Below are positions 3,344-56,972 of a stretch of 64,000 nucleotides of DNA, in pieces. The stretch spans positions 1 to 64,000 of IMG/VR virus record IMGVR_UViG_3300043786_000977; one strand, given 5' to 3'. Position numbers and translations under genes: made by a program. The notes under the pieces were generated by a model. That model had not been told where the DNA came from, made no database searches, and saw only the letters and a program-made list of their open reading frames with translations. The stretch's first letter is position 1. Every line of letters begins with the position of its first letter.

Positions 3344-4825
3344 ATGACGACAAACGGACCATTTAAGGATAGACTGATGACGGCGCTGCACTCGGCAGTG
3401 GGCTACTTCAATCAGGACAACGACCCCAATGCTGCAGTGGTGAAGGCAGCCCACGATGCAGATTTTAACGTGGATCAGACAACGCGTCTGGTCGAAATGT
3501 TTAATACGGCACGTACCTTGTATCACTACAAGAACGCGTCAGACAGAACAGCGACCTTCACCCTGGCTGCTGCAGACGAGGTACTACCTATGTTGTTCGC
3601 GGTACCAGTAACTGTTGCAGAGAAGGCCGCGGCAGCGGATTATAGCACATACGAGCAGCGGGAACAGAGTTATCACGAAGCCGATTATATGGCTAAGGCG
3701 GCTGCGAGCATAAACGCACCGGTTGATGCGTCACTGTCTATGCAGGCTGTGGCTGATCAGGCTATGCGTGCGTTGCGTAATCTGCGACAGACGGCCAAGA
3801 TCGCTGAGGATGAGGCACGTATCGCCGGGCATAATGCGGCGCGTACGTTCCAGAAACTCGCTTCATTATTCGCTTACGGTGCAGATCGCCGCGTACTTGA
3901 AGATCGTTATGCACGACTTGTCGTAGGACACAAGGACGGCGAGTGGCAACCTGTGATTGTTAAACTTGGTGAATTCGTGCCCGCCCATAATAAAGCACCT
4001 GAAGCAATGTTCACCAAGTATGCACGGGTGTATGTCATTGACGATCGCGATCTGCACCCACACTTGGAACTTATGAAAGAGGCCCGGGACTGGATGCAGG
4101 CCGAAGCAGAGATGTTGGCTGCGTCCAGCCAGTTTACCAAGGAAGCCGATGACTTCGAACGTGAGTATCTCGTCGAACTATCCAGTTTTTTTCCACTCCC
4201 GGCCGCGCCCGGTCTCGCTTCGTTCATACGGCCTGAACTGATTAAAGCAGCCTTCGTACCGAACCCAGGCGGTGGACAGCAAGGCGGTGGACAGCAAGGC
4301 GGTGGACAGCAAGGCGGTGGAAAGCCAGGCGGTGGTCAGAAAGATAAGCCGGATAAGCCAGAAAGTGATAAACCCAATCGTTGGTTCACGACTGAACCCT
4401 ACGGCCTTGATGCTGTTCCGTCAGCGTTGTCTGACGGCATGAAACTGTCCCCTGGATCAATCAATGTCGAAGTGGAACGTGCATTCACGGAACCGATAGC
4501 ACGTAATAACCAGGCACTGAGCGAACGGTTAAAGAATGTCCAGCGATCCATTATGCTTCAGGACCTAATGGTGAACGATCCAGTATTATCTGAGGAAGCT
4601 CCCGAGGCTGTGGCGCAAGCGTATAGCGCGATGTTGCAGTTGGCCCCGGAGATGGCAGGTAACAAAGAAGTTGCGCGTGCCGTGTTGCGCCAGATGGTAC
4701 ACTCAGTTGCGGTCAGCCCGTACGATGCTGATATCTGGACGAAGCTGGAAGGCAATATCCGTAACCTACGCGGTAAGGGTGCGCCTATACCGCAACAACA
4801 GTCCGCTGGTGGAGGTAAACGATGA
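3344..4825 (+). CDS. K-x-A-rich putative prohead core/internal protein
   Basis: 493 aa, Ala-rich helical, about 11 K-x-A motifs, GGGQQ low-complexity linker after IKAAF. Confidence 0.7.
   Translation: MTTNGPFKDRLMTALHSAVGYFNQDNDPNAAVVKAAHDADFNVDQTTRLVEMFNTARTLYHYKNASDRTATFTLAAADEVLPMLFAVPVTVAEKAAAADYSTYEQREQSYHEADYMAKAAASINAPVDASLSMQAVADQAMRALRNLRQTAKIAEDEARIAGHNAARTFQKLASLFAYGADRRVLEDRYARLVVGHKDGEWQPVIVKLGEFVPAHNKAPEAMFTKYARVYVIDDRDLHPHLELMKEARDWMQAEAEMLAASSQFTKEADDFEREYLVELSSFFPLPAAPGLASFIRPELIKAAFVPNPGGGQQGGGQQGGGQQGGGKPGGGQKDKPDKPESDKPNRWFTTEPYGLDAVPSALSDGMKLSPGSINVEVERAFTEPIARNNQALSERLKNVQRSIMLQDLMVNDPVLSEEAPEAVAQAYSAMLQLAPEMAGNKEVARAVLRQMVHSVAVSPYDADIWTKLEGNIRNLRGKGAPIPQQQSAGGGKR
4268..4339 (+). 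repeat. 15-bp tandem repeat encoding GGGQQ
   Basis: ggcggtggacagcaa x3 plus two degenerate copies. Confidence 0.9.
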
Positions 4826-5178
4826 ACATACGTGTTTTTAAGAAACTGGACAACGGTGTTTACCAGATATCCGTGCATACGATGGATTGGAGTGAGGCTG
4901 ATAAAGCATTGATGGTAAAATACGGAGAACCCACGATAGACCTGGGCGGTTCATTCGTAGGTGAGACTCCGTATCTGGAATACATACTATCCACCAAACT
5001 CGTGCTTATCATGTCTGAATCCCCGTTTACGCAGCGTTTCGATTCCCGCGATGAAATCGATGCAGATGACCGGGCGACGTTGTGGAAGACCACCATAGTC
5101 GAACGTATCACATCTGAGTTGTTGAACTTACGGGCGAATGCTGATACATTTACAGGTGAAGAGGTAACGACCGTATGA
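4822..5178 (+). CDS. Hypothetical protein
   Basis: 118 aa, GGAGG RBS, ATGA overlaps at both ends. Confidence 0.75.
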   Translation: MNIRVFKKLDNGVYQISVHTMDWSEADKALMVKYGEPTIDLGGSFVGETPYLEYILSTKLVLIMSESPFTQRFDSRDEIDADDRATLWKTTIVERITSELLNLRANADTFTGEEVTTV

Positions 5179-5834
5179 TTAAACAAGCAGACATGAATCA
5201 ACTTCTTGCCGGCCTTAAAGATAAGGCATCACGTGGCGGTGCAGATATCAGTAAGTGGTATGCACGCTTGGATCCTGCAATGAAAGCTACGATCCAGCGC
5301 GGGCTTATCGGCGCTGCAGGTGGCGCGGCACTCACAGGCGGTATCGCGGCGGCTACACCACGCGACCCTGAGGATAAGGGCGGGGTAGTGGGACCGGCCC
5401 TGCTTGGTGCGTTGCTGGGCGGCGCTGGTGGTGCCCTGCTCCCGTATGGCGCGAAGATGCTTTCCGGCGGCGCTGGTGCGGGGGACACAAACAAACGGCC
5501 TATGGGTGCACGTGCGTTTGAGACCGTTACTGCGCCACTGGCTTGGCACCCGCTTATGTTCGGAGGCGGTATATATGGTGCCGCTAAGGCACGGCCTATC
5601 ATTTCCGAAGCAATGAAAGCCACGAAAGCATACAGGGCACAAGGTGGTAGTGGGCTGCGTGGTGCAAAAGAAGTCTTGTTCAACGGGTCCCATCCATTCT
5701 GGGCTAAGAAGCAGGTGATGGATGCCGCAGGTAAGGGCTGGTTAAAAGGTTCGCCGCGTGGCCGCTTGGCCATGCTCCCGTTGCTGGCCGGCCTGGGTTA
5801 CGCGGGCGATAAGTATTTGAAGGGGGAATGGTAA
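5175..5834 (+). CDS. Glycine-zipper membrane-type protein starting MIKQA
   Basis: Several GxxxG-rich hydrophobic segments (GLIGAAGGAALTGGIA; ALLGALLGGAGGALL), basic composition. Confidence 0.7.
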   Translation: MIKQADMNQLLAGLKDKASRGGADISKWYARLDPAMKATIQRGLIGAAGGAALTGGIAAATPRDPEDKGGVVGPALLGALLGGAGGALLPYGAKMLSGGAGAGDTNKRPMGARAFETVTAPLAWHPLMFGGGIYGAAKARPIISEAMKATKAYRAQGGSGLRGAKEVLFNGSHPFWAKKQVMDAAGKGWLKGSPRGRLAMLPLLAGLGYAGDKYLKGEW

Positions 5835-7249
5835 TGAGTGGCATGCTTAAACTCATCTACTCGTCAGCATTCGACAGCGGTGTTGACGTAGCAATGCGGA
5901 TCATCGAAGATCCTGCAGCACTGACTAAATCTGCTGGTACCGTATTCGGTCTCGACTACGATAAGCTACGTCCGGACGATCAGCATGTCGGTATCCACGT
6001 GACTGCATTAGGTGCGTTTGAGCGTTACGGTGCGAATCGTAATGGCGACTCATTCCCGAAGTTAGCGTGTGTCAGGTACCACGACACGTTCGTTAAACAC
6101 GGTGCGCTGTTCCGACATCATCGAAACAAGGATCGTGAAAAGAACCTGGGTTCGATTAAAGCGTCGGCTTGGAATCCAGTAATGGATCGTATCGAGTTAT
6201 TCGTTCATGCTAATAAGGAGCGGGCTGCAGATGAACTGACCCGGTTGGAGAAGGAAGGCGAGATACCTTTTTCCATGGCATGCAAAGTCGCGTTCGATCG
6301 TTGCAACCGCTGTAACACAGTACGTAAGAATGGCAGCGATCCACGCCAGTGTGATCACGTCAAGTACGAGTTGGGCAAGATGGCCGACGACGGTACTGTT
6401 ACGTGTACACATAACGATGAACCGGATTTCTTCGACATCAGTTTCGTAGGGCGGCCGGCCGATCGTATTGCGTGGCATCTTAAAGTTGCGGCAGGCGAAC
6501 TGATTGACTCGATAAAATTGGCTGATGCAGAAGGACTGTGGATACCTGATTATATCGCAATCGAGTCTTCAGCAGGGCAGGTTAAGTTAGCGCATTTGAA
6601 GCGCCTGGTCGCAGCACAGCAGATGTACTACGGATGGTTTACAAAACAGGCAGCAATACAAACACCAAAGGACCGCTATTTCTACGAGTTGAGGAAAGCG
6701 GCAGGAGTATCGTTAAGCGATGAAGTATTGACGAAGTTGCGTGAATACGAGCCTGCGGTTACGTTTAATGCTCTCGCACGGGCGGGTGTAATTTTGGACG
6801 TACCGTCATTCTTCAAGTATGCAATGGGTGATACGTATAGCGAAATCGCGTCATTAATCGATACGATAGCAGCGACAGTCCCTGTAGTTCTTGATACGGC
6901 GGTGAAGCAAGGTGACTGTCAGAGATTGTGTAACGACTGCACGTTTGATGTAGCAGCAGATAGGTCTACACAGATACCGAATGGCTTACTTACTAAATTG
7001 GCTGGGGCATCTTTGGTTGGTCCTTGTCGGGATGAACGGATTATCTCCGTTACCCTGGATGGAAATATACCAAAGTTTGCTGTTGACAAAGAACAACGAA
7101 TGGGGTTTAATATACCTGAAATAGTGGTGTTGGCGGAAAAGTATGCCGCCTACAAGTTATCAGCCCTAACGGCTGTGCTTGGATTCCACAAAGATACTGA
7201 TGTAGATTCACTGATAGCTATAACGGCTACACAGAATCTAGTGAGATAG
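5834..7249 (+). CDS. Prohead (capsid maturation) protease with Cys/His zinc-binding insert and K-x-A-rich C-terminal extension
   Basis: NRNGDSF, FRHH...LGSI, FSMACKV.FDRCNRC...CDH and FFDISFV..PAD motifs match HK97/assemblin-fold phage proteases. Lies upstream of scaffold and capsid. TAATG overlap gives start 5834. Confidence 0.7.
   Translation: MSGMLKLIYSSAFDSGVDVAMRIIEDPAALTKSAGTVFGLDYDKLRPDDQHVGIHVTALGAFERYGANRNGDSFPKLACVRYHDTFVKHGALFRHHRNKDREKNLGSIKASAWNPVMDRIELFVHANKERAADELTRLEKEGEIPFSMACKVAFDRCNRCNTVRKNGSDPRQCDHVKYELGKMADDGTVTCTHNDEPDFFDISFVGRPADRIAWHLKVAAGELIDSIKLADAEGLWIPDYIAIESSAGQVKLAHLKRLVAAQQMYYGWFTKQAAIQTPKDRYFYELRKAAGVSLSDEVLTKLREYEPAVTFNALARAGVILDVPSFFKYAMGDTYSEIASLIDTIAATVPVVLDTAVKQGDCQRLCNDCTFDVAADRSTQIPNGLLTKLAGASLVGPCRDERIISVTLDGNIPKFAVDKEQRMGFNIPEIVVLAEKYAAYKLSALTAVLGFHKDTDVDSLIAITATQNLVR
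7083..7111 (+). promoter_or_regulatory. Sigma-70-type promoter inside the 3' end of the protease gene, facing scaffold/capsid genes
   Basis: TTGACA-N17-TTTAAT. Confidence 0.6.
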
Positions 7250-7266
7250 TAACAGGAGCGACGATT

Positions 7267-8502
7267 ATGGCAAATCCAACATTGAAACAGATCCTCGATG
7301 ATACACGTCGGCTGGTAGCGTCGAAGCAGGCTAGCGCGACGAAGGCAGGAGAGATTGCAGGACAGGCGCCGAGTTCAATGCCTGGTTCAGAACATGACAG
7401 TGCGGTACCGGCTGAACACAAGAAGCCAGATGCCGAGACCCGCGACGGTACCATGGTACCCGCGTCTGGTTTAACGACAGCAGGAGCTGGTGATGACAGT
7501 ACGATAACACGCGGTCACGCCCTGGAATCTGACGAGGCGGCAGAGACACCCGTGAAGAAGCCAGCGATTACGGCGGACGCTAACGCAAAGACAGCAGAAG
7601 GTTCGGCGACATTAGCCAACGAAATTCTGTCGCTCGTGCGTTCAGTGCAGAAGACTGCAGCAGCCCCCAAGGTTGTCGAAACCCCCAAGGTTGTCGAAAC
7701 CCCCAAGGTAGCCGCAGCCCCCAAGGTCGTAGCCAAGCAGGTTACAGCGCCTGAGGTCACTGCAACACCGAAGGTCGCGGCAGACGACTTGAACATGGAA
7801 CTGACGACTGACGTTATGGCCAAGATCGCTGCAATCATCCTATCGACGGAAGAGGGTGCACGCGTGACCGAGAAGATCTTGCAAGAACAGGCCGGCGCCG
7901 AGATGGCCCGTGAGACACTTGGTTTCTTGGCAAAGCAGTCGGAACTTGCTGAGAAGCAGGCTGCGTTTGAACAGGGTCAGGCGGACGCCCAGGCAGCGAT
8001 CGATCGGGCGTTGTATGCAGCAGGATTACGTGCGGGACAACAGAAGCAAGCTTTCCGTAAGTTGGGTCAGGCTGCGGCCGACGCCAGCATGGGTGAGCTC
8101 ATGGGTGGCGCAGGCGGCGATGCAGGTGGCGATCCGATGGCGGGCGATCCTGCGGCCGGTGCAGCCGAGGGCGATCCTATGGCCGGCGGAGAAGGTGGAG
8201 AAGGCGGCGAGATCACGATGGAAGACATTGTGGCAGCCCTCGAGTCCATGGTCCAGGATGGTTCGTTAAAGCCTGAAGATGCACAGCAATTGCTGACCGA
8301 ACTCACGAACGGTGCAGGCGGAGACCCGGCGGCCGGTGCAGACCCGATGGCCGGTGCTGCGGGTGCGGAAGGTGCAGACCCGATGGCCGGTGCTGCGGGT
8401 GCGGAAGGTGCAGACCCGATGGCAGGCGCGGAGGGCGCTCCGGCCAATAAGGCAGCGGCCATGCTCGATGTAATTCGCCAGCTGCAGAAATCAAAGGCTT
8501 AA
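7267..8502 (+). CDS. Putative scaffolding/core protein
   Basis: Acidic, Ala/Gly-rich, low complexity, about 9 K-x-A motifs, between protease and capsid genes, AGGAG RBS. Confidence 0.6.
   Translation: MANPTLKQILDDTRRLVASKQASATKAGEIAGQAPSSMPGSEHDSAVPAEHKKPDAETRDGTMVPASGLTTAGAGDDSTITRGHALESDEAAETPVKKPAITADANAKTAEGSATLANEILSLVRSVQKTAAAPKVVETPKVVETPKVAAAPKVVAKQVTAPEVTATPKVAADDLNMELTTDVMAKIAAIILSTEEGARVTEKILQEQAGAEMARETLGFLAKQSELAEKQAAFEQGQADAQAAIDRALYAAGLRAGQQKQAFRKLGQAAADASMGELMGGAGGDAGGDPMAGDPAAGAAEGDPMAGGEGGEGGEITMEDIVAALESMVQDGSLKPEDAQQLLTELTNGAGGDPAAGADPMAGAAGAEGADPMAGAAGAEGADPMAGAEGAPANKAAAMLDVIRQLQKSKA
7666..7737 (+). repeat. 18-bp tandem repeat encoding PKVVET/PKVAAA
   Basis: Four cccaaggt-initiated 18-bp units. 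Confidence 0.8.
8335..8423 (+). repeat. 36-bp tandem repeat encoding GADPMAGAAGAE
   Basis: Two exact copies plus a partial third. Confidence 0.9.
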
Positions 8503-8545: not shown

Positions 8546-8902
8546 ATGGATACAGTAACACAAGAATTGTTGGTCAAGACGGCGGCGTACATCGAACGTA
8601 CGCAGCCCTTGCTTGATTCACAAAACGAACAGCGAACAGCATTCACGAAACGAGCAACACAGGCAGCCGGTGTGCTAGCACACCGCGGTATCATTGATAC
8701 GCGCCGTGTCAACGAATTCGTTGACAAGGTAGCAGCAGATCCGACAGCTGTCTGGGAGTTCGTCGAGAAACTGGCAGCAGTAGTGCCAGCGGACACGTGG
8801 GGCGAAGCGGTGCGTCAAAAGGTCGCATCGAGTGGTAAAGTGGATCCATTCGAACGGATATTTTTCGGCATCGGTGCCGAGAGATCCGGAATGGTAGATT
8901 AA
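8546..8902 (+). CDS. Small K-x-A-rich head/core protein
   Basis: 118 aa; 5 of 6 lysines are in K-x-A; AGGAGG RBS. Confidence 0.75.
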   Translation: MDTVTQELLVKTAAYIERTQPLLDSQNEQRTAFTKRATQAAGVLAHRGIIDTRRVNEFVDKVAADPTAVWEFVEKLAAVVPADTWGEAVRQKVASSGKVDPFERIFFGIGAERSGMVD

Positions 8903-9499: not shown

Positions 9500-10456
9500 A
9501 TGGATACGACACAAAACATCCCGACCCCGGTAATGAATGCAAAGATCTTGGAAGCCTTGGATCGTGACAACGTGAAGATGGCCCAGGACGCTTCTACGGA
9601 TTACACCCGTACAGGCATTCGTGAAGAGTCATTCGCGTTTAAGATTCAGCCGCCCGAGAAGGCTACTGATGACATGCTCGATCGCGCTCTCGATGAACGC
9701 TTGCAGATCATCTGGGAGTTGGAACCCGATAGCCCTGGGGCTAAGTGGGTACCGTTGCAGACAGTGCCAGACGGTGAATACATCACCGGTTCGCGGTACA
9801 TCATTCCGTTTGCACGCGTATTGACCCCGAAGTTCGTGAAGGACATCGACGAACTTCGCACCACTCGTCAGGACATTCGCAAGATTCTGACCGACAACTC
9901 CATCAAGGACGCGTTGGGCGAAATCGATAGCAAGTGGATCTCGACGGTTAACTCGATCGTGTTCGACGCGCCTGCAGCGGGCGAAGCGAACAACGAGACA
10001 GGCAAGGTTCAGTGGGTTGACTTTGCGGACGGCATCACACGCGATACCTTCGCCGAAGCCAAGAAGCTATTGCCCCGTGGTAATGCACAGGGTAAGTTCC
10101 GTCTACGCAACTACATCGCGCTGATGAACGATGTATCTGCACAGGACCTGTTGAAGCGTCCTGCAACGGATGTCGGTGACGAGATCGCCGGCGACACGTG
10201 GAAGAACGGTCTGACGACTGATACAATCATGGGCGTGAAGTGCGTCTTCACGATCAAGAGCGATTTGGTCCCGGACAACTACGTGTACTTCTTCGCGGCC
10301 CCAGAGTTCCTGGGCAAGTGTTTCTACCTGACAGACTGGACAATGTACATGAAGAAGGAAGCGTACTTCATCGAGATGTTCAGCTACTGGCTGGGTGGTT
10401 TCGCCTTCGGTAACATCGCCGGTATGGCGTTGGCGCGGTTCAATCAGAACAGCTAA
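9500..10456 (+). CDS. Major capsid protein (HK97-fold, inferred)
   Basis: 318 aa, last in protease-scaffold-decoration order, strong C-ending codon bias, followed by a terminator; VKMAQ near the N-terminus. Confidence 0.7.
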   Translation: MDTTQNIPTPVMNAKILEALDRDNVKMAQDASTDYTRTGIREESFAFKIQPPEKATDDMLDRALDERLQIIWELEPDSPGAKWVPLQTVPDGEYITGSRYIIPFARVLTPKFVKDIDELRTTRQDIRKILTDNSIKDALGEIDSKWISTVNSIVFDAPAAGEANNETGKVQWVDFADGITRDTFAEAKKLLPRGNAQGKFRLRNYIALMNDVSAQDLLKRPATDVGDEIAGDTWKNGLTTDTIMGVKCVFTIKSDLVPDNYVYFFAAPEFLGKCFYLTDWTMYMKKEAYFIEMFSYWLGGFAFGNIAGMALARFNQNS

Positions 10457-10514: not shown

Positions 10515-10533
10515 ATTATCGACGGGAGTGAAT

Positions 10534-10965
10534 ATGAACATGGAACTCAGAGTTTCAGAACACTGGTTGAATGGATTTAACAAGGCCGCAGAGGCCATGG
10601 GTTTGACACCTGAGCAGGTACCCAGCCTATTTAGGCTGGCACAACGACTTGAAACCAGGGCCGCAGATCCTGAGACCTTCGATAAGGGTGCTGAGGCTGT
10701 GCTAAAGATGGAGAAGGTCGCGATCAATATCAAGTCACTGTTACTTTTGGGACTCGGTGGTGGCGCGGCACTGGGTGGGAGTTCGTTGATGGGTTCGTTC
10801 GGCAGATCGATGGAAGATAAGGAGTTCGCTAAACGTATGCGCCAGGCGCGTGAAATCTATTCACGTAACAAGACCCACCAGCTTTCACTAGCTTCGTTGC
10901 CGGGTATGGGAGGCGGACAGCAAGGTGGTTACGGCATGGGCGGTTACGGTCAGTATCCGTACTGA
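10534..10965 (+). CDS. Putative internal virion protein: K-x-A leader plus one glycine-rich hydrophobic segment
   Basis: WLNGFNKAA...EKVA leader then LLLLGLGGGAALGG. Start is uncertain among 10528, 10534 and 10540. Confidence 0.65.
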   Translation: MNMELRVSEHWLNGFNKAAEAMGLTPEQVPSLFRLAQRLETRAADPETFDKGAEAVLKMEKVAINIKSLLLLGLGGGAALGGSSLMGSFGRSMEDKEFAKRMRQAREIYSRNKTHQLSLASLPGMGGGQQGGYGMGGYGQYPY

Positions 10966-12909: not shown

Positions 12910-15900
12910 ATGTCATATACCCTACCGCAAGTGCAGGTGTTTCAGATCTTCCGGCAGTTGCCACAGAACGTAGTCAAGAATTTGAATGCGTTCGTCTTCG
13001 GACCGCATTATCAGTTATTCCGCTACGCTGTAGCAGCTGAGAAAGAACTGATCAGCCTCGGCGCGTACGCTAAGGATGCAGATGTAACCTATCCATGGCC
13101 CAATCAACCTACAAACAGTGTTGTGGACCTTGGCTATGTGAAGCTGTATGCCGAGAACGTATGGGCCGAGTATTTGGCGATCACGGCGGGCAATGAAGCC
13201 CAGATCGTCAGTGAAGAGGAACGCAATAAGGTTCGCGTTGACGATCTTGTTTTGAAGGAAGCAAATGGGTATACCCGTTCCGCGGGCATCCTGCGTGACG
13301 TGGCTGTAGGCGATCGTGTACGTTATTCGTATACCGATCTATACGACGTCGTGCATACAGGTACCACGAAGATTGTGGGACTCGAAGCAGACATGATAGC
13401 CGCGGTCGTCGGCGATGCAGCTGCAAAGGCCTCTAACCAGGCGGACGTGACTGGCACAGCCGATCTCGATTCCGGCGCAACCGCACCTGTAACAACGCCG
13501 GCTGGTGTCATGACACTGAGTGCGGTCTACGCATTGGCAGGTATCGGATCCGATGATCAGTTCCCTGGGTTACTATCTGCGGGTGTGGTTGAAGATACAA
13601 TCACGATCACGATTACCACCGGTGGTGCCAAGGGTACAGCGCGTGCAACCGTGGCCTACGCCTCTGGTATGTACACACGCGAAAACGCGTTGATCGAAAC
13701 TGCGGGGAGCCAGGAAGGCCAGATCTACCTCGGTAACAACGTGTACCTGGAATTCGAAGCGGATTCCGGCGAAGACACCGACTTTGTGGAAGACACCGAG
13801 TTTACAGTCGAATTGGCAGCTGTCTTCACGAAGCCTGATGCCGCGACATTCGGCGTTCCGAGTGCAGATTATACAGGGACAAGCAAGACAACGTACGTGC
13901 TCGAAGTCGTCCGCGGTGGTTTGTTCGATCGCACTGTTACAGTGTCGAAGGGTCTGACCAATGTCGCCGATAAGGTGCTGAAGGTCGGTCCCGGCGATTC
14001 TACTACACCTGACTGGACCACATGGCTGGGTGGTGACTATGATGACGAGTATATCCTACGCTGCACAGGCGCAGGTAGCGTAACCGTTGCCAAGTTCACA
14101 CTGGTATCGCAACGCGGGGATAACGAGAGCACCGTGATGTTCAGTGCTGCTGACACGGATGTAACCGTCGGTAATCGGGGTCTTGTGGCTCAGTTGCCCG
14201 CAGGCACCTACAGCGTAGGCGACTACTGGGTTATCCGTGTCAACGCGTCTCGTCCGCAGATCAAGATCACTGACACGGCAGGAATCGACGCTACGCAGTT
14301 TAAGACTGTGGCTGATGCCACGTTGATGGACATCGGCGCTTACGGTGTGGAATTCACACCGGCAGCCAATTCTAACGCGGAAGGTGGCGTAGATGCCCAG
14401 GGCGGTTTGCGTCGTGGCGATGTATACTACATCACCTGCACACCGGCCGTGGTTGACGCTGTTAAGACGATGGTGTTCGCTGACTCGCTGGCATCTGGAA
14501 TCCCTGCGGGTGTGGATATTGCACTATGGTTGTACATGGTAAAGAACGGCGTCGAAGTTACCGGGAAGCGTACGCAGGTTGCACCTGATTACAACTGGCA
14601 AGGTGACGTCGACGACGGTATTACCGTCTATCAGGATCTCCAGGTCCAGGATGATTCGTGGGCAACAGAAGAGGGTGAGCATCTGTGGTTGGACGTATAC
14701 AGCGCTACGTTGTATGTCGAGTACCGTGCGTTGTTGAACAGCTACACAGACACAATCCATGTGATGACTGATGTCAGTGATGTGGCAACCACATTGGGTA
14801 CCGTGCATCCGGATAACCCGTTGGCGCAAGGCGTGTATAACGCGTTGCTGAACAGCGGTGACCGGGCCGTATACTACATGGGTGTCGTATCTGTGGATGC
14901 TGCGGGTTGGAGCAGAGCCTTGGATAAGGCGACGCTGTCGGAAGACGTCTATGTGTTCGTACCACTAACCCAGGATGCAGCCATGCTTGACCTGGTTAAG
15001 GCACACATCGATACGCTGTCGACGGAGACTGAGAAGCACTGGCGTATCGGCTTCTTCGGCGCGACAACACCTACAGAGGATCCAATTTACACCAAGGTAT
15101 CCAACCCGGCAGGGGAAGACTTCTTGGCTCAGATCGCGTTGGACTCTGAGACCGCCGAATACACGCTGTTGACATTCGTCGACGCAGACGGTGATCCTTC
15201 GACCTATACGGAAGCGTTGGACGACCTGAAGGCCGGCGACAAGGTTCGTATTAACTTCGCTACTGATGCATGGGGCGATGCCACATACGCAGAATTCGAA
15301 GTGGCTACGGTACTCACCAACACGTCGTTGCGGTTGGAAGCAGGACCGGCGAGCGCGATCGATATGCCTACGAAGGTAGAAGTTATTCACCCGTACACGT
15401 TGGCTGAAATGGCCGACGCAGTGGCGGCACAGTCGAACGGGTACTTCAGTCGTCGTATCTATAACGTCTTCCCGTCACAGTTGGGTTCGAACGGTGTGGT
15501 AATGACAGGTGAATTCGGTGCAGCCGCTGTTGCTGGTCTAGCCAGCTCGGTGCCTCCGCAGCAGCCTATCACTAACATCGAAGTCAATGGTTTCGATGAC
15601 CTACCGTTGGTTTACCAGACGTACAATCGCACACAGTTGAACAAGATGGCGGAATACGGTACCATGATCCTCATGCAGGACACTGCAGGTGGGCGGATAT
15701 ACGTACGTCACCAGGTCTCAACCCAGGCGAAGGACGGTAATCTGAATACGACTGAGTTGAGCATCACGAAGAACCTCGACTCGATCTCGTACTTCTTCGC
15801 AGCTATGTTCGCGCCTTATATTGGCCGGTACAATATCACGCCGGAACTGATTGAGGTTCTACGGACACAGTTGGTGGCCGGTCTGAATTACCTAGGCTCG

Positions 15901-16059
15901 TTGACGAGCGTCGGTAATCTGGGGCCGCAACTCAATCTCACGCAGACCGAAATTGTTGAGATGCGCCAGCACCCGTTGCTGGAGGATCATGTGGTAGCTA
16001 CGGTAAACCTTGGAATGCCGAAGCCGTTCAACGTGTTCCAGTTGAAGTTAGTGGTGTAA
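12910..16059 (+). CDS. Contractile tail sheath protein (large, with inserted beta domains)
   Basis: 1049 aa; N-terminal YTLPQVQV; C-terminal ELSITKNLDSIS...YIGRYNIT...PKPFNVFQLKLVV sheath-type motifs. Confidence 0.8.
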   Translation: MSYTLPQVQVFQIFRQLPQNVVKNLNAFVFGPHYQLFRYAVAAEKELISLGAYAKDADVTYPWPNQPTNSVVDLGYVKLYAENVWAEYLAITAGNEAQIVSEEERNKVRVDDLVLKEANGYTRSAGILRDVAVGDRVRYSYTDLYDVVHTGTTKIVGLEADMIAAVVGDAAAKASNQADVTGTADLDSGATAPVTTPAGVMTLSAVYALAGIGSDDQFPGLLSAGVVEDTITITITTGGAKGTARATVAYASGMYTRENALIETAGSQEGQIYLGNNVYLEFEADSGEDTDFVEDTEFTVELAAVFTKPDAATFGVPSADYTGTSKTTYVLEVVRGGLFDRTVTVSKGLTNVADKVLKVGPGDSTTPDWTTWLGGDYDDEYILRCTGAGSVTVAKFTLVSQRGDNESTVMFSAADTDVTVGNRGLVAQLPAGTYSVGDYWVIRVNASRPQIKITDTAGIDATQFKTVADATLMDIGAYGVEFTPAANSNAEGGVDAQGGLRRGDVYYITCTPAVVDAVKTMVFADSLASGIPAGVDIALWLYMVKNGVEVTGKRTQVAPDYNWQGDVDDGITVYQDLQVQDDSWATEEGEHLWLDVYSATLYVEYRALLNSYTDTIHVMTDVSDVATTLGTVHPDNPLAQGVYNALLNSGDRAVYYMGVVSVDAAGWSRALDKATLSEDVYVFVPLTQDAAMLDLVKAHIDTLSTETEKHWRIGFFGATTPTEDPIYTKVSNPAGEDFLAQIALDSETAEYTLLTFVDADGDPSTYTEALDDLKAGDKVRINFATDAWGDATYAEFEVATVLTNTSLRLEAGPASAIDMPTKVEVIHPYTLAEMADAVAAQSNGYFSRRIYNVFPSQLGSNGVVMTGEFGAAAVAGLASSVPPQQPITNIEVNGFDDLPLVYQTYNRTQLNKMAEYGTMILMQDTAGGRIYVRHQVSTQAKDGNLNTTELSITKNLDSISYFFAAMFAPYIGRYNITPELIEVLRTQLVAGLNYLGSLTSVGNLGPQLNLTQTEIVEMRQHPLLEDHVVATVNLGMPKPFNVFQLKLVV

Positions 16060-47447: not shown

Positions 47448-47888
47448 ATGTTTTTACCCATAAGACCGATAGGCGTGAACACGCCGAATCCGGAGGATCG
47501 CATGCCGATATGGCAGGTGATCAATGGTGATGATTGGTCGCTTAACACACGGGTCTATATTCCACCTGCACTAACCACACCCGCAACGCCAGACAACAGT
47601 CGTGTGATCTTTGTCTTGGCCCAGGATCGTTTTAGCAAGACACCTATCTGGACCGCCCGTTGGTTGGACGGTATTCTTGAAGCAGACAAAATCAATCATC
47701 CCGGTTTGATCAGCGTACGTATCCCAGATGATATTACGAGTACACTGCGGCGTGGTGCGTACGCCTTTTCGCTGACTGTGGCAGACAGTTTCGGACGGCA
47801 CACGGTGACAGTGTTGACTGGCGCCATTCAAGTGGAATACGAGCCCACGTCACCTTTGCATAACATCCCGTATAGGAGAGATTCATGA
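47448..47888 (+). CDS. Hypothetical beta-rich (Ig-like?) protein
   Basis: GGAGG RBS; GDDW...GLISVRIP..T..L..GAY.F pattern. Confidence 0.6.
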   Translation: MFLPIRPIGVNTPNPEDRMPIWQVINGDDWSLNTRVYIPPALTTPATPDNSRVIFVLAQDRFSKTPIWTARWLDGILEADKINHPGLISVRIPDDITSTLRRGAYAFSLTVADSFGRHTVTVLTGAIQVEYEPTSPLHNIPYRRDS

Positions 47889-48883
47889 GTGATAAGGTAG
47901 CCCAGGAAATTGAACAAAAAAGGAAGGCGCCACCACGCCATAAACCGCGGGATGTAGCCTATCCTGATTATAACAAGTCACTCGTCACTCAACGGCATCG
48001 ATCACCGTTACGCGCTGGTGGGGAGCGTGCTGCTCAGACCGGTTTAACAGGGGCGGTACTCGGTGCACTCATCGCTCGCATTATGAGCAACAAGCCTCAG
48101 AATGTGGTTGGCGGTGCATTGGCTGGTGGTGCGTTGGGTGCAGTCCCGGGATTCGTTTCAGGTGCACGGGAAGCGAACAGTGAGAACAGTCGACTCCTCT
48201 TCCTACGTCGGCGCATGGGGATCAACGAACCAGGTGAACTGGATGCCCTGTTACAACATCCCGAGCTCATGCCATCGTTGAGTCAGAAGAAGGCCGCTGC
48301 ACCCAGCGCTATTTTGCAGGCTTTACAGAAGTTGCATCCGGTCAATAAAGGGTTGTTAACAGCAGGTGCTGCTGGTTTAGGCTGGGTCGGCGGTACGGAG
48401 GGTACATCGCGACTGGTGGGTTATCACGATGACCCGAGTGCACGGCATGTAGGCGGTTATGTCAATGCCGCGCAGGCGGCAGGGATCGTCGCGGCTATCT
48501 TGAGTAAGAAACCGCAGGCCCTTCATTTTCTAAAGAAACCAGGAACCTTAGCAGGTATGGCAAGTATGGAAGTAATTCCTGCAGGACTACGTTCCATGAA
48601 CCGTATGTCAGATGCTTCAGCAGCACAAGCAACGGGTCAGGTTTCACCGTCGATCTCTCGTGTCTTGAATACGTCTACTGCCCGGGGCGCAGGAATCGGC
48701 GCCGGTGCTGCAGGGTTGGCTGCCATTGTCTCTGGACTCTCAAGGTCCAAGCGTGACAAAGAGATCCAAGAGGGCCACGGCCGCGCTGGAATGGTCACCA
48801 GTGACTTCCTTAAATACTTGTTGCCTGCCATGATCGGTGGCGGTGTCGTCGGTTCTTTAACTGGGAAAAAGCCTTCTGCATAA
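47885..48883 (+). CDS. Glycine-zipper membrane-type protein with K-x-A motifs
   Basis: MSDKVAQ start, internal QKKAAA, about six GxxxG hydrophobic segments. Confidence 0.65.
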   Translation: MSDKVAQEIEQKRKAPPRHKPRDVAYPDYNKSLVTQRHRSPLRAGGERAAQTGLTGAVLGALIARIMSNKPQNVVGGALAGGALGAVPGFVSGAREANSENSRLLFLRRRMGINEPGELDALLQHPELMPSLSQKKAAAPSAILQALQKLHPVNKGLLTAGAAGLGWVGGTEGTSRLVGYHDDPSARHVGGYVNAAQAAGIVAAILSKKPQALHFLKKPGTLAGMASMEVIPAGLRSMNRMSDASAAQATGQVSPSISRVLNTSTARGAGIGAGAAGLAAIVSGLSRSKRDKEIQEGHGRAGMVTSDFLKYLLPAMIGGGVVGSLTGKKPSA

Positions 48884-52059: not shown

Positions 52060-54846
52060 CTACGCTATATTGCGTAACGGTATTATCCTGTCAGCTGCCA
52101 CAACCCGCGGAAGCCAGAGCAGTTTCCGTTCGATCTGTGTATTCCATGTTTCCTTACGGATGATCCAGCAACGGTTCTTATCGACTTCGAGTTCTTCAGG
52201 ACCGTCAACGAGCAAGTTACGCTCCTTCAGTTCCTGCGTCAAGCCTTTGACGTCAAATGATAACTGCGCCGTCAGTTCCTTGTTCATACGATTTACGACT
52301 GCATGACTGATGATGACGTAATCATCCAATACGAAGATGTGTTGGTTACGAGCCGTGAAGCTGGTGGCAGTCGGCATCGCATTGTAGACGGTACAGATGA
52401 TAGGTGACTTGAATGACGCAAAGATGATTCGGTGCAGACTATCGAAGAACGAGTTAACGCCTGCGCCCATGTTATAGTAACTGTGTTTCATGATCTGCTG
52501 CATCATAGGCTGTGTGTCTAGTCCGAGCATAGTACAGATTGCACTGTAGGTACTCCAGGCCGGGTGCTGGCCGGTAGCATATACGTCAGTCGTTTTTGCG
52601 TGCACGATATACTCAAGTACGAAGGACGCAAACGACTCACGCAACTCAGCCAACGCTGCGGGATCGATGACACTCGTGGGTTCTGGTTTATCCGACACTG
52701 GTAATATGTAGGTCGTCCTCAGATCGCCGCCGTACATACCCGCCGTACTGCCGTCGGTTAGGGCGACCAGACTTATGGGACTGTTGAGGATCACTTGTTG
52801 CATACGGTCGCCACGCAGCGGAGGCAGGCAACCAATGAGGGGTAACGTACCTAGTTGTTCGTAAGCCTCAAGACTCTTGATTGGATTGGCAGGATCGATA
52901 ACGGGGATGAAATCATTGTCCGAGAAGAAGGCGCTGAGTTGACGGAATAACGGTTGCCATATACCAGCTTCCGACTCTACATAGAAAAGGTGACGTGGGC
53001 GTTGGTTATGTCCATGCTTCGCGTGGTGTAGTTCCTGTGTCATTTGGTGTACGACGTGCAGCAAACCACTGGTGAATGCTGCCACGTACATATTGTCACA
53101 ACTCTGCAACAGGTAGCGGTAGGGCTCCACCGCGCTTATTACGCTTTGCCCGGGGATTCCAGAGTATACTTGTGTTGCTGCAGCCGGCAACGTATGGATC
53201 TGTTTTTGTGGTGCAATGACAAGTTGATCCGTTCTGATGACAAAATTCGGTAAGTGTAGATCGTGGGCCTGGTCACAGCCCAGTCGTTGAACCTCACGAT
53301 GGAGTTCGCACTTTTCACCCAATTTACATAGGATGTCACGCCAGTCGTAACCCGGGTGCTCGTAGAACGCAATATACGGGGCTTGATTGCGTTCGCCGAA
53401 TGCACGGATGACGTGACGTTGTAATTCCTTTGCCTTGCCCCATATCGGTTCTGGTATACGTACGACTAACGGTAATGTGGCAGTATCTGTAGGTGTCACC
53501 GTGACGATGAGTTCTTCCTCACCTGTGTATGTACGGATTTTATGGTTAACAGTGATGCCGACGTTGCACAAGACTGATTCGTTACCTCGACGATCGAGTG
53601 CTTTGAGTGCCGTAGTCGTGCGATAGAGTCCGCATCCGTTTCCGAGGATCAGGCGATTTGTGGATTCGGCAACAGCTGTTTGTAGAATCTCTAGCCCTTC
53701 TTTCGAGATCTTCAGACGTTGTGCTGCGCTTATTAGTTCTAGACGTACATTGTCAGGTAACGTAACGGAGTAGAATGCCTTGTATACCTCTTCGGTACCG
53801 TTATGACTTAAAAGGCGATCCATTGTTCGGAGTGTCCACGTGTCTAATGCGAGTGTGCCATCCGCACTACTCAGACGATGCCTAAGCTGTTCCGCTGTAA
53901 TCTGTGTAGCGTCGTGGGCCTCCCACACCTTGATCCGTGGTTGTAGGGCGGCGCCACTTACGTAATGCTGGACGGCTAGTGTTTGCAGTGCGTTGAACAG
54001 CGTGAGAGGCTGTGCCTGCGTAGCTAGTAGAAAAAGAATGTCCAATGAGGCGAAACGTTCAGGCAGCGGGAACCCGGCTAGCGCGATGATGGGTGGTCGC
54101 TTACTGGATTCGGCCGTGTAGGTCCCATATAGTAAACTGGCTGCATGTGGATCGAATGTCGCGATCACGGAACGTGGCATATCATCGAACCGCTCCATGT
54201 AGACACCGATATCGTCCCGCGTAATCGTTATCGTTGTAGTCGTCAGTGGTGATGCTGCATCTTCCACGCGAATATGGGTGACCTCGCCGTTGTACGTGAA
54301 TGGGTAGATGATATGATTCGTGCGTTGGTACTTGGTCTTGTTAAATTCCTGGAACGGTCGTGGAATCTCGTCACCCCGAACGAGCAAGCCGATCTCGGGC
54401 GGTAGGACTCGTAGGTTATTCTGCGACAGGCCGGCACGCAGTTGTAACTTATTGGGTGTTTGGCGACAGGCTTGTTGGCATTGGCTTACGTACGCCTGGA
54501 TACGACTTTGTGTGGTGCGCCCTTCCGTATAGGCGGCAGCCTCGCTATCCAATAAGGGTTCTGTCAACAGGTGAGCGTAGGTGCCGCCTGGACGGAATTG
54601 GGCTACGGCTTCTGTAATCGTGAGGCGTTTTACCGCACTGAGTAGACTGACTGCGTCACCATAGAAGCGACAGGCAGGGTCCGCACACTCGAAGAACGTA
54701 TTACCCGTATACGGATTGGCATGAACACGCAAGGTGTCGGCCGCACTAGCGTGCAGGGGACAGCTATACTTGGCGTTGACATTATCCCCCGGATGGGGTA
54801 ATGTACATCCTAAAGCAGATAAGAAGTTGTGGTTATGCAGTTGCAT
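52060..54846 (-). CDS. Primase-like protein with N-terminal CHC2-type zinc finger, apparently degenerate
   Basis: CPLH...FECADPACRFYGDAVSLL...LTITEAV zinc-binding domain; no clear TOPRIM acidic motifs or Walker A. Confidence 0.5.
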   Translation of the reverse strand: MQLHNHNFLSALGCTLPHPGDNVNAKYSCPLHASAADTLRVHANPYTGNTFFECADPACRFYGDAVSLLSAVKRLTITEAVAQFRPGGTYAHLLTEPLLDSEAAAYTEGRTTQSRIQAYVSQCQQACRQTPNKLQLRAGLSQNNLRVLPPEIGLLVRGDEIPRPFQEFNKTKYQRTNHIIYPFTYNGEVTHIRVEDAASPLTTTTITITRDDIGVYMERFDDMPRSVIATFDPHAASLLYGTYTAESSKRPPIIALAGFPLPERFASLDILFLLATQAQPLTLFNALQTLAVQHYVSGAALQPRIKVWEAHDATQITAEQLRHRLSSADGTLALDTWTLRTMDRLLSHNGTEEVYKAFYSVTLPDNVRLELISAAQRLKISKEGLEILQTAVAESTNRLILGNGCGLYRTTTALKALDRRGNESVLCNVGITVNHKIRTYTGEEELIVTVTPTDTATLPLVVRIPEPIWGKAKELQRHVIRAFGERNQAPYIAFYEHPGYDWRDILCKLGEKCELHREVQRLGCDQAHDLHLPNFVIRTDQLVIAPQKQIHTLPAAATQVYSGIPGQSVISAVEPYRYLLQSCDNMYVAAFTSGLLHVVHQMTQELHHAKHGHNQRPRHLFYVESEAGIWQPLFRQLSAFFSDNDFIPVIDPANPIKSLEAYEQLGTLPLIGCLPPLRGDRMQQVILNSPISLVALTDGSTAGMYGGDLRTTYILPVSDKPEPTSVIDPAALAELRESFASFVLEYIVHAKTTDVYATGQHPAWSTYSAICTMLGLDTQPMMQQIMKHSYYNMGAGVNSFFDSLHRIIFASFKSPIICTVYNAMPTATSFTARNQHIFVLDDYVIISHAVVNRMNKELTAQLSFDVKGLTQELKERNLLVDGPEELEVDKNRCWIIRKETWNTQIERKLLWLPRVVAADRIIPLRNIA

Positions 54847-54869
54847 TTCAGTTCGATATGCTCCATACT
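54841..54869 (+). promoter_or_regulatory. Candidate sigma-70-type promoter in the divergent gap
   Basis: TTGCAT-N17-CATACT. Confidence 0.45.
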
Positions 54870-54904
54870 ACACATGTTGGAGTCTGAAAGTAAAGGAGAT
54901 TTCT

Positions 54905-56670: not shown

Positions 56671-56972
56671 GATCAGCATTACTAACAGTGGAGTTCTGGG
56701 TGACGATGGTAACGAACGTCGTCGGTTTAGTTGTCCTGTTCGGTGGACTATCCGCGGATAAAGCAGATTCGCTGAAGTCGACCCTGACAGTGATCATAGG
56801 TGCCGTACTACCGCTGGTCGCGTCGACAGTATACGCCAAGTCGCGTAGTGATCTGAAACGCACAATTGCAGATGCAACACTTTATCGTCTAACGCCTACG
56901 GATGCAGACGGTAAGGTACGCACTGCTTCAGTGGACGACGCGACAGCTGTTTTAAAACGTCTGGGCATCTAA
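56667..56972 (+). CDS. Holin-like small membrane protein
   Basis: 101 aa, two hydrophobic helices, TVEFW N-terminal motif, charged C-terminal tail. Confidence 0.45.
   Translation: MRSALLTVEFWVTMVTNVVGLVVLFGGLSADKADSLKSTLTVIIGAVLPLVASTVYAKSRSDLKRTIADATLYRLTPTDADGKVRTASVDDATAVLKRLGI

What the first reader, a model, noticed from the sequence alone, without database searches (positions are those of the whole stretch)
5175..5834. Family of K-x-A-tagged glycine-zipper membrane-type proteins
Seen: 5175..5834, 10534..10965, 47885..48883 and the N-half of 56972..58708 combine an early K-x-A with GxxxG hydrophobic helices, and two lie inside the head operon. Inference: they are packaged, processed and ejected to form a membrane conduit or protective compartment at infection, or they anchor prohead assembly on the inner membrane.
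Basis: inference. Interest (0 to 1): 0.6.

Follow-up and report, generated by a model that had tools for sequence, protein, structure and literature searches.

The report
Protease-tagged glycine-zipper phage head proteins
A 209-kb jumbo phage encodes several small glycine-rich, weakly hydrophobic proteins in and around its head genes that carry the same short K-x-A tag as its capsid and scaffold proteins, most likely the cutting site of its T4-like head protease, so they are probably packaged head proteins, but their membrane role is still a guess.

Summary
The window is the first 64 kb of a 208,908-bp jumbo myovirus. Its nearest cultured relative is Salmonella phage Arash.

- **The ORFs.** All four are real, but they are not one sequence family.
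- **Main family.** 5175-5834 belongs to a large undescribed family, with 182 representatives at E<=1e-3. It has a two-helix glycine-zipper hairpin and a conserved C-terminal helix. A protein of this build is encoded directly upstream of the protease gene in 20 of 21 related loci by script, and 21 of 21 after one call was corrected by eye.
- **The protease.** I show that the neighbouring gene 5828-7249 has the T4 gp21 prohead-protease fold (Z 11.3).
- **K-x-A is not chance.**
  - It is about twice as common as expected in the head module.
  - Its context is [L/F/M]-[E/V/I]-K-x-A-[S/A/E].
  - In the capsid protein it sits between a variable leader and the conserved body.
  - In the 5175 family it is 3-fold enriched in the first 30 residues and 3.7-fold depleted afterwards.
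  - This fits a maturation-protease site and a protein that survives inside the head.
- **The other three ORFs.** 47885-48883 shows the same signature in its own family. 10534-10965 is a weaker case. The N-half of 56972-58708 is neither hydrophobic nor conserved.
- **Untested.** Membrane insertion, ejection and presence in virions are untested. Hydrophobicity is marginal.

The parts
5175..5834 (+). P0001, 219 aa. It is the founding member here of an undescribed head-module family. It has an N-terminal M-x-K-Q-A-D, a glycine-zipper helical hairpin and a C-terminal helix ending D-K-Y-L-K-G-E-W.
   Evidence: Translation. Homologues. The profile search found 182 representatives at E<=1e-3 and 93 at E<=1e-10. 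N- and C-termini of 70 members are. No Pfam or PHROG family matches. GAAGAGG lies 10 nt upstream of the ATG at 5175, which overlaps the upstream stop as ATGA.
5181..5189 (+). Codons of K3-Q4-A5, the only K-x-A in P0001.
   Evidence: One search finds 1 K-x-A, and one search gives 3.2 expected. Across the family, the first 30 residues hold 62 against about 19 expected, and the rest holds 36 against about 132 expected.
5301..5453 (+). Glycine-zipper hairpin. Helix 1 is residues 43-62, the acidic loop is R-D-P-E-D-K-G-G, and helix 2 is residues 69-93.
   Evidence: KD 1.34 and 1.81. These are the most conserved columns of the family: G46 is invariant, and G50, G78, A79, G82 and G92 are nearly so. 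Net charge is +4 before the hairpin, -1 in the loop and +2 after it.
5766..5831 (+). C-terminal hydrophobic helix with its terminal motif.
   Evidence: G208 and G217 are invariant, D212 is nearly invariant, and the D-[KR]-Y-[LI]-[KR]-G ending recurs in most members.
5828..7249 (+). Prohead maturation protease, 473 aa. The N-terminal domain has the T4 gp21 / herpesvirus assemblin fold. The protein is itself rich in K-x-A.
   Evidence: The AlphaFold2 model of residues 1-250 has pLDDT 71. Foldseek's top hit is 5jbl. VIA-align gives Z 11.3, rmsd 3.0 over 139 residues to T4 gp21, and Z 7.0-8.6 to the best herpesvirus proteases. The Atlas feature search gives Peptidase_S78/S77 as the nearest named families. 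It matches Arash gp222 at 39% identity, E 2e-37. K-x-A count is 13 against 3.5 expected.
3344..4825 (+). K-x-A-rich head-core protein, 493 aa, related to Arash gp220.
   Evidence: K-x-A count is 11 against 3.6 expected. The sites are conserved in L002 and L005. BLASTP to gp220 gives E 1.8e-6.
4822..5178 (+). 118-aa protein, translationally coupled to P0001. It has no K-x-A.
7267..8502 (+). Scaffold-like protein, 411 aa, low-complexity, Ala/Pro/Gly-rich and rich in K-x-A.
   Evidence: K-x-A count is 10 against 5.6 expected, and K-x-A-[ASQ] is 7 against 1.7. Alignment. The role is inferred from its position and composition.
8546..8902 (+). 118-aa head protein with five conserved K-x-A sites.
   Evidence: 5 against 0.8 expected. 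All five are conserved in L002 and L005.
9500..10456 (+). Major capsid protein, 318 aa. K-M-A-Q lies at residues 26-29, at the leader/body boundary.
   Evidence: The Atlas feature search scores 0.98 to phage major capsid clusters. It matches the annotated Arash major capsid protein at 30% identity, E 4e-32. The N-termini of 14 relatives are.
10528..10965 (+). P0002, 145 aa from the GTG start (143 aa from 10534). It has a conserved N-terminal G-F-x-K-A-A...G-L-x-x-E-Q module, an E-K-x-A just before one glycine-zipper segment, and a Gly/Tyr tail.
   Evidence: There is a weak profile match to Arash gp221, E 0.012. The same build is seen in the Vibrio phage D69 gene upstream of its protease.
47885..48883 (+). 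P0003, 332 aa, a multi-glycine-zipper protein with N-terminal K-V-A-Q. It belongs to a separate family.
   Evidence: 37 homologues were found. Pfam Gly-zipper hits are sub-threshold. The neighbourhood is conserved. K-x-A in the first 30 residues is 15 against 4-5 expected, and in the rest 27 against 44-47.
54734..55957 (+). K-x-A-rich 407-aa protein with a faint DUF6582 match, conserved near P0003 and P0004.
   Evidence: 12 against 3.7 expected..
56972..58708 (+). P0004, 578 aa. A variable, non-hydrophobic N-half is followed by a LigD 3'-phosphoesterase and a DUF192 domain. G-L-V-K-I-A-Q occurs at residues 37 and 263.
   Evidence: Pfam. In alignment A3, conservation begins exactly at the second motif. 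The start is TAATG-coupled to the upstream gene.
12910..16059 (+). Tail sheath. It is context, marking the end of the head module.
   Evidence: phrog_279, E 5.8e-13. A baseplate wedge subunit lies at 28615-30222.

Best explanation
5175-5834 encodes an internal head (prohead-core) protein of a jumbo myovirus that also encodes a multisubunit RNA polymerase next to its head genes.

It is made together with the portal-proximal core proteins, the gp21-fold protease, the scaffold and the capsid protein. It is co-assembled into the prohead. It carries a single K-x-A site a few residues from its N-terminus. That site is the recognition or cleavage motif of the prohead protease.

The scaffold-like proteins carry 10-20 such sites and are degraded. 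This protein has evolved to avoid the motif everywhere else, so the mature body stays in the head. That body consists of the glycine-zipper hairpin, a linker and the C-terminal helix.

The weakly hydrophobic, Gly-faced helices are suited to self-association. I infer that after ejection they insert into the host inner membrane.

47885-48883 and, less clearly, 10534-10965 are independent proteins built on the same plan. So are about eight further ORFs at 69 kb and at 187-199 kb of the genome. 56972-58708 shares only the K-x-A tag. It is a probable packaged nucleic-acid end-repair enzyme, not a membrane-type protein.

**Shown here:** the gene order, the protease fold, the motif statistics and the family conservation.

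**Inferred:** cleavage at K-x-A, packaging, ejection and membrane insertion.

The confidence given is for the whole chain. The first half, a head protein exposed to the protease with K-x-A as its processing or targeting motif, I put at about 0.6. The second half, ejection and membrane insertion, I put at about 0.3.
For: 1. **Position.** A Gly-zipper hairpin protein lies directly upstream of the protease gene in 20 of 21 related loci by script, and 21 of 21 after reading L014 by eye. Only 4 of 231 other ORFs have such a segment.
2. **Protease.** The N-domain of 5828-7249 matches T4 gp21 with Z 11.3, rmsd 3.0 over 139 residues, with herpesvirus assemblins next.
3. **Motif enrichment.** The head module holds 54 K-x-A against 27 expected. 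The tail region and the rest of the genome are at expectation: 55 against 56, and 195 against 199. Arash shows the same enrichment in gp220, gp222, gp223 and gp225.
4. **Motif context.** Over 614 sites the context is [L/F/M]-[E/V/I]-K-x-A-[S/A/E]-[A/D]. In those proteins, chosen for their high K-x-A count, R-x-A, K-A, K-xx-A and A-x-K are not enriched.
5. **Capsid protein.** In 14 relatives a variable leader of 24-36 residues precedes K-x-A, and a highly conserved sequence follows it.
6. **P0001 family.** K-x-A is 3.2-fold enriched in the first 30 residues (62 against 19) and 3.7-fold depleted in the rest (36 against 132). R-x-A (168 against 143) and A-x-K (136 against 131) are not depleted. 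N-terminal variants carry S or G in place of A.
7. **P0004.** The motif sits at the point where conservation begins, and relatives carry different N-terminal domains.
8. **Precedent.** The T4 gene order is 20-67-68-21-22-23, with core proteins between the portal and protease genes (established knowledge). SPN3US ejection proteins lose N-terminal propeptides to a prohead protease at A-x-E (PMC10052503).
9. **Arash.** RNA polymerase subunits dominate the Arash virion preparation, and the Gly-zipper proteins gp221 and gp224 were detected (PMC10585845).
Against: - There is no proteomic or N-terminal sequence evidence for this phage or for any member of the family.
- Arash gp221 and gp224 are analogues, not detectable homologues, of P0001. 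That preparation contained 116 proteins, and the reported 100% coverage for both does not suggest loss of an N-terminus.
- A cut after residue 5 removes almost nothing, so the motif could be a binding or targeting element rather than a cleavage site.
- Part of the K-x-A depletion reflects segregation of Lys from the Ala/Gly-rich segments. K-xx-A is also 1.7-fold depleted.
- Hydrophobicity is marginal for a transmembrane helix.
- The AlphaFold2 model was uninformative.
- The scissile bond is unknown. It could lie after Ala, as in herpesvirus proteases, or after Lys, matching the T4 pattern of hydrophobic-x-E.
Confidence: 0.45

Rival explanations
1. The protein is an inner-membrane-anchored head-assembly factor. 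The hairpin sits in the host inner membrane during late infection. There it nucleates or tethers the portal/core initiation complex, as gp40 and YidC do for the T4 portal. The protein is left behind and is not a virion component.
For: The position next to the portal-proximal, core and protease genes is conserved. The charge distribution around the hairpin fits an N-in/C-in membrane hairpin: +4, -1, +2. The gene is translationally coupled to neighbouring head genes.
Against: Strong depletion of K-x-A in the body with retention of one N-terminal site is more easily explained by long co-residence with the active protease inside the prohead. It does not exclude a tether that touches the protease. 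Hydrophobicity is marginal for co-translational insertion. No signal for membrane targeting was found.
Confidence: 0.2
2. The protein is a soluble structural or core protein. The Gly/Ala-rich helices are helix-packing modules inside the prohead core or on the inner capsid surface, with no membrane role at any stage.
For: The median best KD window is only 1.54, and 45 of 70 members stay below 1.6. Glycine content is about 15%. The P0001 family does not match the Pfam glycine-zipper membrane families: 1 of 70 members has a weak hit.
Against: Two uncharged segments of 20-25 residues, separated by a short acidic Pro-containing loop, are the most conserved part of a family whose remainder drifts freely. 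About ten such proteins in one genome would be an unusual way to build a soluble core.
Confidence: 0.2
3. It is coincidence of composition. The four ORFs are unrelated Gly/Ala-rich proteins, and the early K-x-A is the chance occurrence of a common tripeptide.
For: There is no pairwise similarity. 27 of 305 ORFs have K-x-A in the first 20 residues. The N-half of 56972-58708 is neither hydrophobic nor conserved.
Against: The family-wide statistics and positional conservation argue against it. So does the defined motif context.
Confidence: 0.05

Closest known systems
Internal head and ejection proteins of phiKZ-like giant phages (SPN3US gp53/gp54 and others), processed by the prohead protease gp245
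   Same: Both are large myoviruses with a multisubunit RNA polymerase. SPN3US packages its polymerase, and in Arash the polymerase subunits dominate the virion preparation. Both have a T4 gp21-type protease, a short three-residue cleavage motif, N-terminal propeptides on proteins that stay in the head, and multiple motifs in proteins that are degraded (PMC10052503).
   Different: The motif is K-x-A rather than A-x-E. There is no sequence similarity. The proteins here are small, with glycine-zipper hydrophobic helices. In P0001 the piece before the motif is only a few residues long. Processing here is inferred, not measured.
T4 prohead core genes 67 and 68 and the internal proteins IPI-III
   Same: They lie between the portal gene and protease gene 21 (order 20-67-68-21-22-23). 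The internal proteins carry a short N-terminal capsid-targeting sequence that gp21 removes. This is established T4 knowledge.
   Different: T4 uses L/I-x-E. Neither gp67/gp68 nor the internal proteins are known for hydrophobic Gly-zipper helices. No homology was detected by the PHROGs scan.
Ejection proteins of podoviruses (T7 gp14/15/16, P22 gp7/16/20) and the phiX174 H pilot protein
   Same: They are packaged proteins that leave the capsid and build a trans-envelope conduit, and some have membrane-inserting helices.
   Different: This phage has a contractile tail. There is no sequence or fold evidence of relatedness, and no evidence of ejection.
Pfam glycine-zipper membrane domains (PF05433 Rick_17kDa_Anti / Gly-zipper 2TM, PF13441 YMGG)
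   Same: They share a two-helix hairpin of GxxxG-type repeats of about 45 residues. P0003 scores just under threshold.
   Different: P0001 and 69 of 70 family members do not match. The Pfam families are mostly bacterial outer-membrane lipoproteins, not phage head proteins.
Herpesvirus assemblin cleavage sites
   Same: The protease fold is the same. From my own knowledge, not re-checked here, the herpesvirus sites have Ala at P1 and Ser at P1' in a (V/L)-x-A/S consensus. This resembles K-x-A-[S/A].
   Different: It is a resemblance only, and the scissile bond here is not known.

Membership tests
Pfam Glycine zipper 2TM domain (PF05433) / Gly-zipper_YMGG (PF13441) | Score at or above the curated gathering threshold. 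| tested here: not met
   P0001 has no hit. P0003 scores 20.6 against 24.2 and 18.7 against 28.9. Only 1 of 70 P0001-family members has a weak hit.
Substrates of a T4 gp21-type prohead protease (propeptide-bearing head proteins) | The phage encodes a gp21/assemblin-fold protease in the head module. | tested here: met
   Z 11.3, rmsd 3.0 over 139 residues to 5jbl, and the gene is adjacent to P0001.
Substrates of a T4 gp21-type prohead protease (propeptide-bearing head proteins) | The protein carries the protease's consensus motif near the N-terminus, and the mature part avoids it. | tested here: inconclusive
   The pattern is present and statistically strong. The motif itself is inferred from sequence, not defined experimentally.
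Substrates of a T4 gp21-type prohead protease (propeptide-bearing head proteins) | The mature N-terminus is observed in virions. | not testable with these tools
   It needs semi-specific LC-MS/MS or Edman data. The Arash table gives coverage only.
Phage ejection / pilot proteins | The protein is present in the virion and is transferred to the host envelope at infection. | not testable with these tools
   The only data are that analogous Arash proteins were detected in an impure virion preparation.
Holins | A small protein with strongly hydrophobic transmembrane domains, encoded in a lysis cassette next to an endolysin. | tested here: not met
   P0001 and P0002 lie in the head module. P0003 is 332 aa with a maximum KD of 1.56. 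No PHROG or Pfam lysis family was found next to any of them.
One paralogous family comprising the four ORFs | Detectable sequence similarity between the members. | tested here: not met
   BLASTP finds nothing significant. hhalign of the P0001 family against the P0003 family gives E 0.0047 on the 43-column hairpin only.

The most novel reading that the evidence does not exclude
This phage clade packages a whole set of about ten protease-tagged glycine-zipper proteins per genome, together with its virion RNA polymerase. It ejects them to build an oligomeric channel, or a membrane-associated early-infection compartment, in the host inner membrane. K-x-A would then be both the capsid-targeting signal and the maturation signal. 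This would be a new class of membrane-active ejection proteins in contractile-tailed phages.
Probability: 0.15. Interest if true: 0.8.

Novelty: new variant of a known kind. Interest (0 to 1): 0.55.

Why it matters
- **A testable rule.** If K-x-A is the cleavage motif of this gp21-fold protease, it becomes a simple sequence rule. The rule predicts which proteins of an almost unannotated jumbo-phage clade are head-internal. That clade includes Arash, Vibrio phages D69, D148 and D181, and many metagenomic genomes of 120-212 kb. Nearly all of the head-module genes scanned have no Pfam or PHROG match, so the rule would also show which proteins are degraded and which persist.
- **An open question.** The Gly-zipper proteins would be candidates for how large myoviruses that carry a virion RNA polymerase get proteins and DNA across the inner membrane.
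- **A laboratory model.** Arash is cultured and could be used to test this.

Tried and rejected
- **PHROGs and Pfam on the four proteins and their neighbours.** Almost nothing was found.
- **megablast of the window against phage records.** No match.
- **tblastn of P0001 and P0003 against phage records.** No match.
- **The search for related loci with P0001 alone.** Nothing.
- **The genome search on metagenome loci.** These records are not held.
- **AlphaFold2 of P0001 with the 6-row alignment.** pLDDT was 41, all-helical and unusable, so no fold search was run on it.
- **phmmer of the protease against PDB sequences.** Only chance azurin hits.
- **hhalign of the P0001 family against Arash gp221 and gp224.** No relation.
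- **Complex prediction, protease domain with P0001 residues 1-42.** No verdict: 0.40 against a control of 0.26. This is not evidence either way.
- **Literature searches.** Searches for glycine-zipper phage head or ejection proteins found nothing relevant.
- **Bacillus phage G.** It has a related protease, gp19. It does not share the capsid K-x-A or a Gly-zipper gene upstream.
- **Holin reading for P0003.** Considered and rejected on size, weak hydrophobicity and context.
- **Alternative genetic code.** Not needed.
- Not used.

Full report
**What the window is**

The window is bases 1-64000 of a 208,908-bp virus record with direct terminal repeats. Genes are almost all on the + strand. The module boundaries are as follows.
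- 9500-10456 is the major capsid protein. The Atlas feature search scores 0.98 to capsid clusters. It is 30% identical, E 4e-32, to the annotated capsid protein of Salmonella phage Arash.
- 12910-16059 is a tail sheath, phrog_279, E 5.8e-13.
- 28615-30222 is a baseplate wedge subunit.
- The genome encodes a multisubunit RNA polymerase just upstream of the head genes, across the record ends.

So this is a jumbo myovirus. Nearly all of its head-module genes have no Pfam or PHROG match.

**The observation**

All four ORFs exist.
- 5175-5834 (P0001) has two uncharged Gly/Ala-rich segments, residues 43-62 and 69-93. They are joined by an acidic Pro-containing loop.
- 10534-10965 (P0002) has one such segment.
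- 47885-48883 (P0003) has five, plus sub-threshold Pfam glycine-zipper hits.
- The N-half of 56972-58708 (P0004) has no segment above KD 1.43. It is not conserved in relatives.

The four are not similar to each other. An early K-x-A by itself is common: 27 of 305 ORFs have one in the first 20 residues.

**P0001 is a real, large, undescribed family with a fixed place in the head module**

The word search found four relatives besides the record's own gene call. A profile search of 1.84 billion representatives found 182 at E<=1e-3 and 93 at E<=1e-10, most matching end to end.

Gene order around it is conserved in metagenome contigs.

Using the neighbouring 473-aa protein as bait, I fetched 22 related IMG/VR loci from genomes of 46-212 kb, most above 120 kb. 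The ORF directly upstream of the bait carries Gly-zipper segments in 20 of 21 loci by script. The 21st, L014, also does once the right frame is read. Only 4 of 231 other ORFs have such a segment.

Lengths vary from 240 to 549 aa, but the plan is constant:
- a hydrophilic N-terminus;
- a two-helix Gly-zipper hairpin with a short charged loop;
- a free-drifting linker;
- a C-terminal Gly-rich helix.

**The neighbour is the prohead protease**

A model of residues 1-250 of 5828-7249, built from a 16-row alignment, has pLDDT 71. It matches T4 gp21 best: Foldseek's top hit is 5jbl, and VIA-align gives Z 11.3, rmsd 3.0 over 139 of 164 residues. Herpesvirus assemblins follow at Z 7.0-8.6. The Atlas feature search had pointed to Peptidase_S78/S77.

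The order is therefore: core proteins, P0001, protease, scaffold-like protein, small proteins, capsid protein. This parallels the T4 order 20-67-68-21-22-23 (established knowledge).

**K-x-A is a real motif of this head module**

Counts against per-protein shuffles:

| Region or protein | K-x-A observed | Expected |
|---|---|---|
| Head module, whole | 54 | 27 |
| Tail region | 55 | 56 |
| Rest of genome | 195 | 199 |
| 3344-4825 | 11 | 3.6 |
| 5828-7249 (protease) | 13 | 3.5 |
| 7267-8502 | 10 | 5.6 |
| 8546-8902 | 5 | 0.8 |
| 54734-55957 | 12 | 3.7 |

- The sites are conserved in relatives.
- The same enrichment holds in every related locus and in Arash gp220, gp222, gp223 and gp225.
- Over 614 sites the context is [L/F/M]-[E/V/I]-K-x-A-[S/A/E]-[A/D]. 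In these proteins, chosen for their high K-x-A count, R-x-A, K-A, K-xx-A and A-x-K are not enriched.
- In the capsid proteins of 14 relatives, a variable leader of 24-36 residues ends in K-x-A, and a highly conserved sequence follows.
- In P0004 and two relatives with different N-terminal domains, G-L-[VL]-K-[IV]-A marks the exact start of conservation. A second copy lies near the N-terminus.

These are the hallmarks of a maturation-protease site. Comparable cases are L/I-x-E in T4 and A-x-E in SPN3US (PMC10052503). Whether the cut follows Ala or Lys cannot be told from sequence.

**The tag on the Gly-zipper proteins**

In 70 P0001-family members, no two of them in the same 50%-identity cluster, 55 have K-x-A in the first 30 residues, at offsets 2-25. 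It is usually the only one in the protein. Some members have S or G in place of A.

Counts in this family:

| Pattern | Region | Observed | Expected |
|---|---|---|---|
| K-x-A | first 30 residues | 62 | about 19 |
| K-x-A | rest | 36 | about 132 |
| R-x-A | rest | 168 | 143 |
| A-x-K | rest | 136 | 131 |
| K-x-G | rest | 56 | 142 |
| K-xx-A | rest | 76 | 131 |

K-xx-A is also partly depleted, so segregation of Lys from the Ala/Gly segments contributes to the effect.

Most of the 17 aligned members of the P0003 family carry h-K-x-A-Q/E near a variable-length N-terminus. Their internal depletion is milder: 27 against 44-47.

P0002 keeps K-A-A inside a conserved G-F-x-K-A-A...G-L module, and an E-K-x-A just before its hydrophobic segment. 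The genes upstream of the protease in Arash (gp221) and in Vibrio phage D69 have this same build.

Outside the window the genome has about eight more Gly-zipper ORFs, at 69 kb and at 187-199 kb, several with an early K-x-A.

**Interpretation**

The best reading is that these are head-internal proteins exposed to the protease. Scaffold-like proteins, loaded with sites, are destroyed. The Gly-zipper proteins keep one N-terminal site and avoid the rest, so they persist.

The membrane function remains an inference from the Gly-zipper hairpin and its charge pattern of +4, -1, +2. Arguments against it:
- Hydrophobicity is marginal. The median best KD window is 1.54, and only 25 of 70 members reach 1.6.
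- There is no Pfam membership.
- The monomer model was unusable.

The only proteomic hint is that Arash gp221 and gp224 were detected, with 355 and 222 spectra, in a preparation in which RNA polymerase subunits were the most abundant proteins. That preparation listed 116 proteins, including ribonucleotide reductases (PMC10585845). gp221 and gp224 are analogues, not homologues, of P0001. A complex prediction of protease with the P0001 N-terminus gave no verdict.

**Verdict**

It holds for three of the four ORFs, and there is no common family.
- The K-x-A idea is better than chance and is probably the most useful result.
- 'Packaged and processed' is plausible. 'Ejected membrane conduit' and 'membrane anchor' remain open alternatives.
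- I found nothing like this described in the literature.
- I file it as a new variant of the known theme of protease-processed internal head proteins.

Noticed in passing
window 56972-58708: P0004 fuses a LigD 3'-phosphoesterase domain and a DUF192 domain behind a variable N-part. Relatives add an ATP-dependent DNA ligase and a 2'-5' RNA ligase (LigT) domain. The K-x-A motifs at the domain boundary suggest a packaged nucleic-acid end-repair enzyme.
   Followed up: partly
window 45626-46618; L010 4482-6755: There is a subtilisin-type S8 protease (Pfam E 9.6e-43) after the tail and baseplate genes. The relative at L010 has one in the same block upstream of its P0003 homologue, where the gene also carries an intein. 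It would be a second phage protease, of unknown role.
   Followed up: no
window 49419-52029: A UDP-galactopyranose mutase (Glf, E 1e-63) lies on the + strand. It faces a GT-D-fold glycosyltransferase on the - strand. These are phage-encoded galactofuranose/glycan enzymes next to P0003, and the GT-D gene is conserved in a relative (L009).
   Followed up: no
G000 69113-69580 and 187256-199100 (outside the window): About eight more Gly-rich hydrophobic ORFs lie here, for example 187256-187858, 193040-193471, 194961-196481, 196482-196955 and 197287-198216. Several have an early K-x-A or the G-F-x-K-x-A-E-x-G module. The 187-199 kb group lies just upstream of the RNA polymerase gene.
   Followed up: partly
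G000 199093-204492 and 205875-207722: These are multisubunit RNA polymerase genes directly upstream of the head module: a long frame with a beta-like Rpb2_6 domain, and a beta' C-terminal Rpb1_5 protein. In relative L005 the large subunit carries a LAGLIDADG insertion.
   Followed up: partly
window 56667-56972: This 101-aa protein has two classical, strongly hydrophobic transmembrane helices (KD 1.9-2.1). Its stop overlaps the P0004 start. Unlike the Gly-zipper proteins, it is a bona fide membrane protein.
   Followed up: no
window 5175 versus 5193, and 56972 versus 57119: The record's own gene calls start P0001 at Met7 and P0004 at a GTG 49 codons downstream. Homologue conservation, start/stop overlap with the upstream gene and, for P0001, an upstream SD-like sequence favour the longer forms, which contain the K-x-A motifs.
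   Followed up: yes
window 2-1687 (C-terminal part of an 826-aa gene that spans the record ends): This is a homologue of Arash gp218, an abundant 'structural protein' with 1149 spectra. It sits at the head of the module and could be the portal, although Arash annotates gp204 as the portal.
   Followed up: no
window 8916-9458: This 180-aa protein lies just before the capsid gene (phrog_4147, E 1.5e-4). It occupies the position of the capsid decoration protein gp26 of Bacillus phage G. It has few or no K-x-A across relatives.
   Followed up: no
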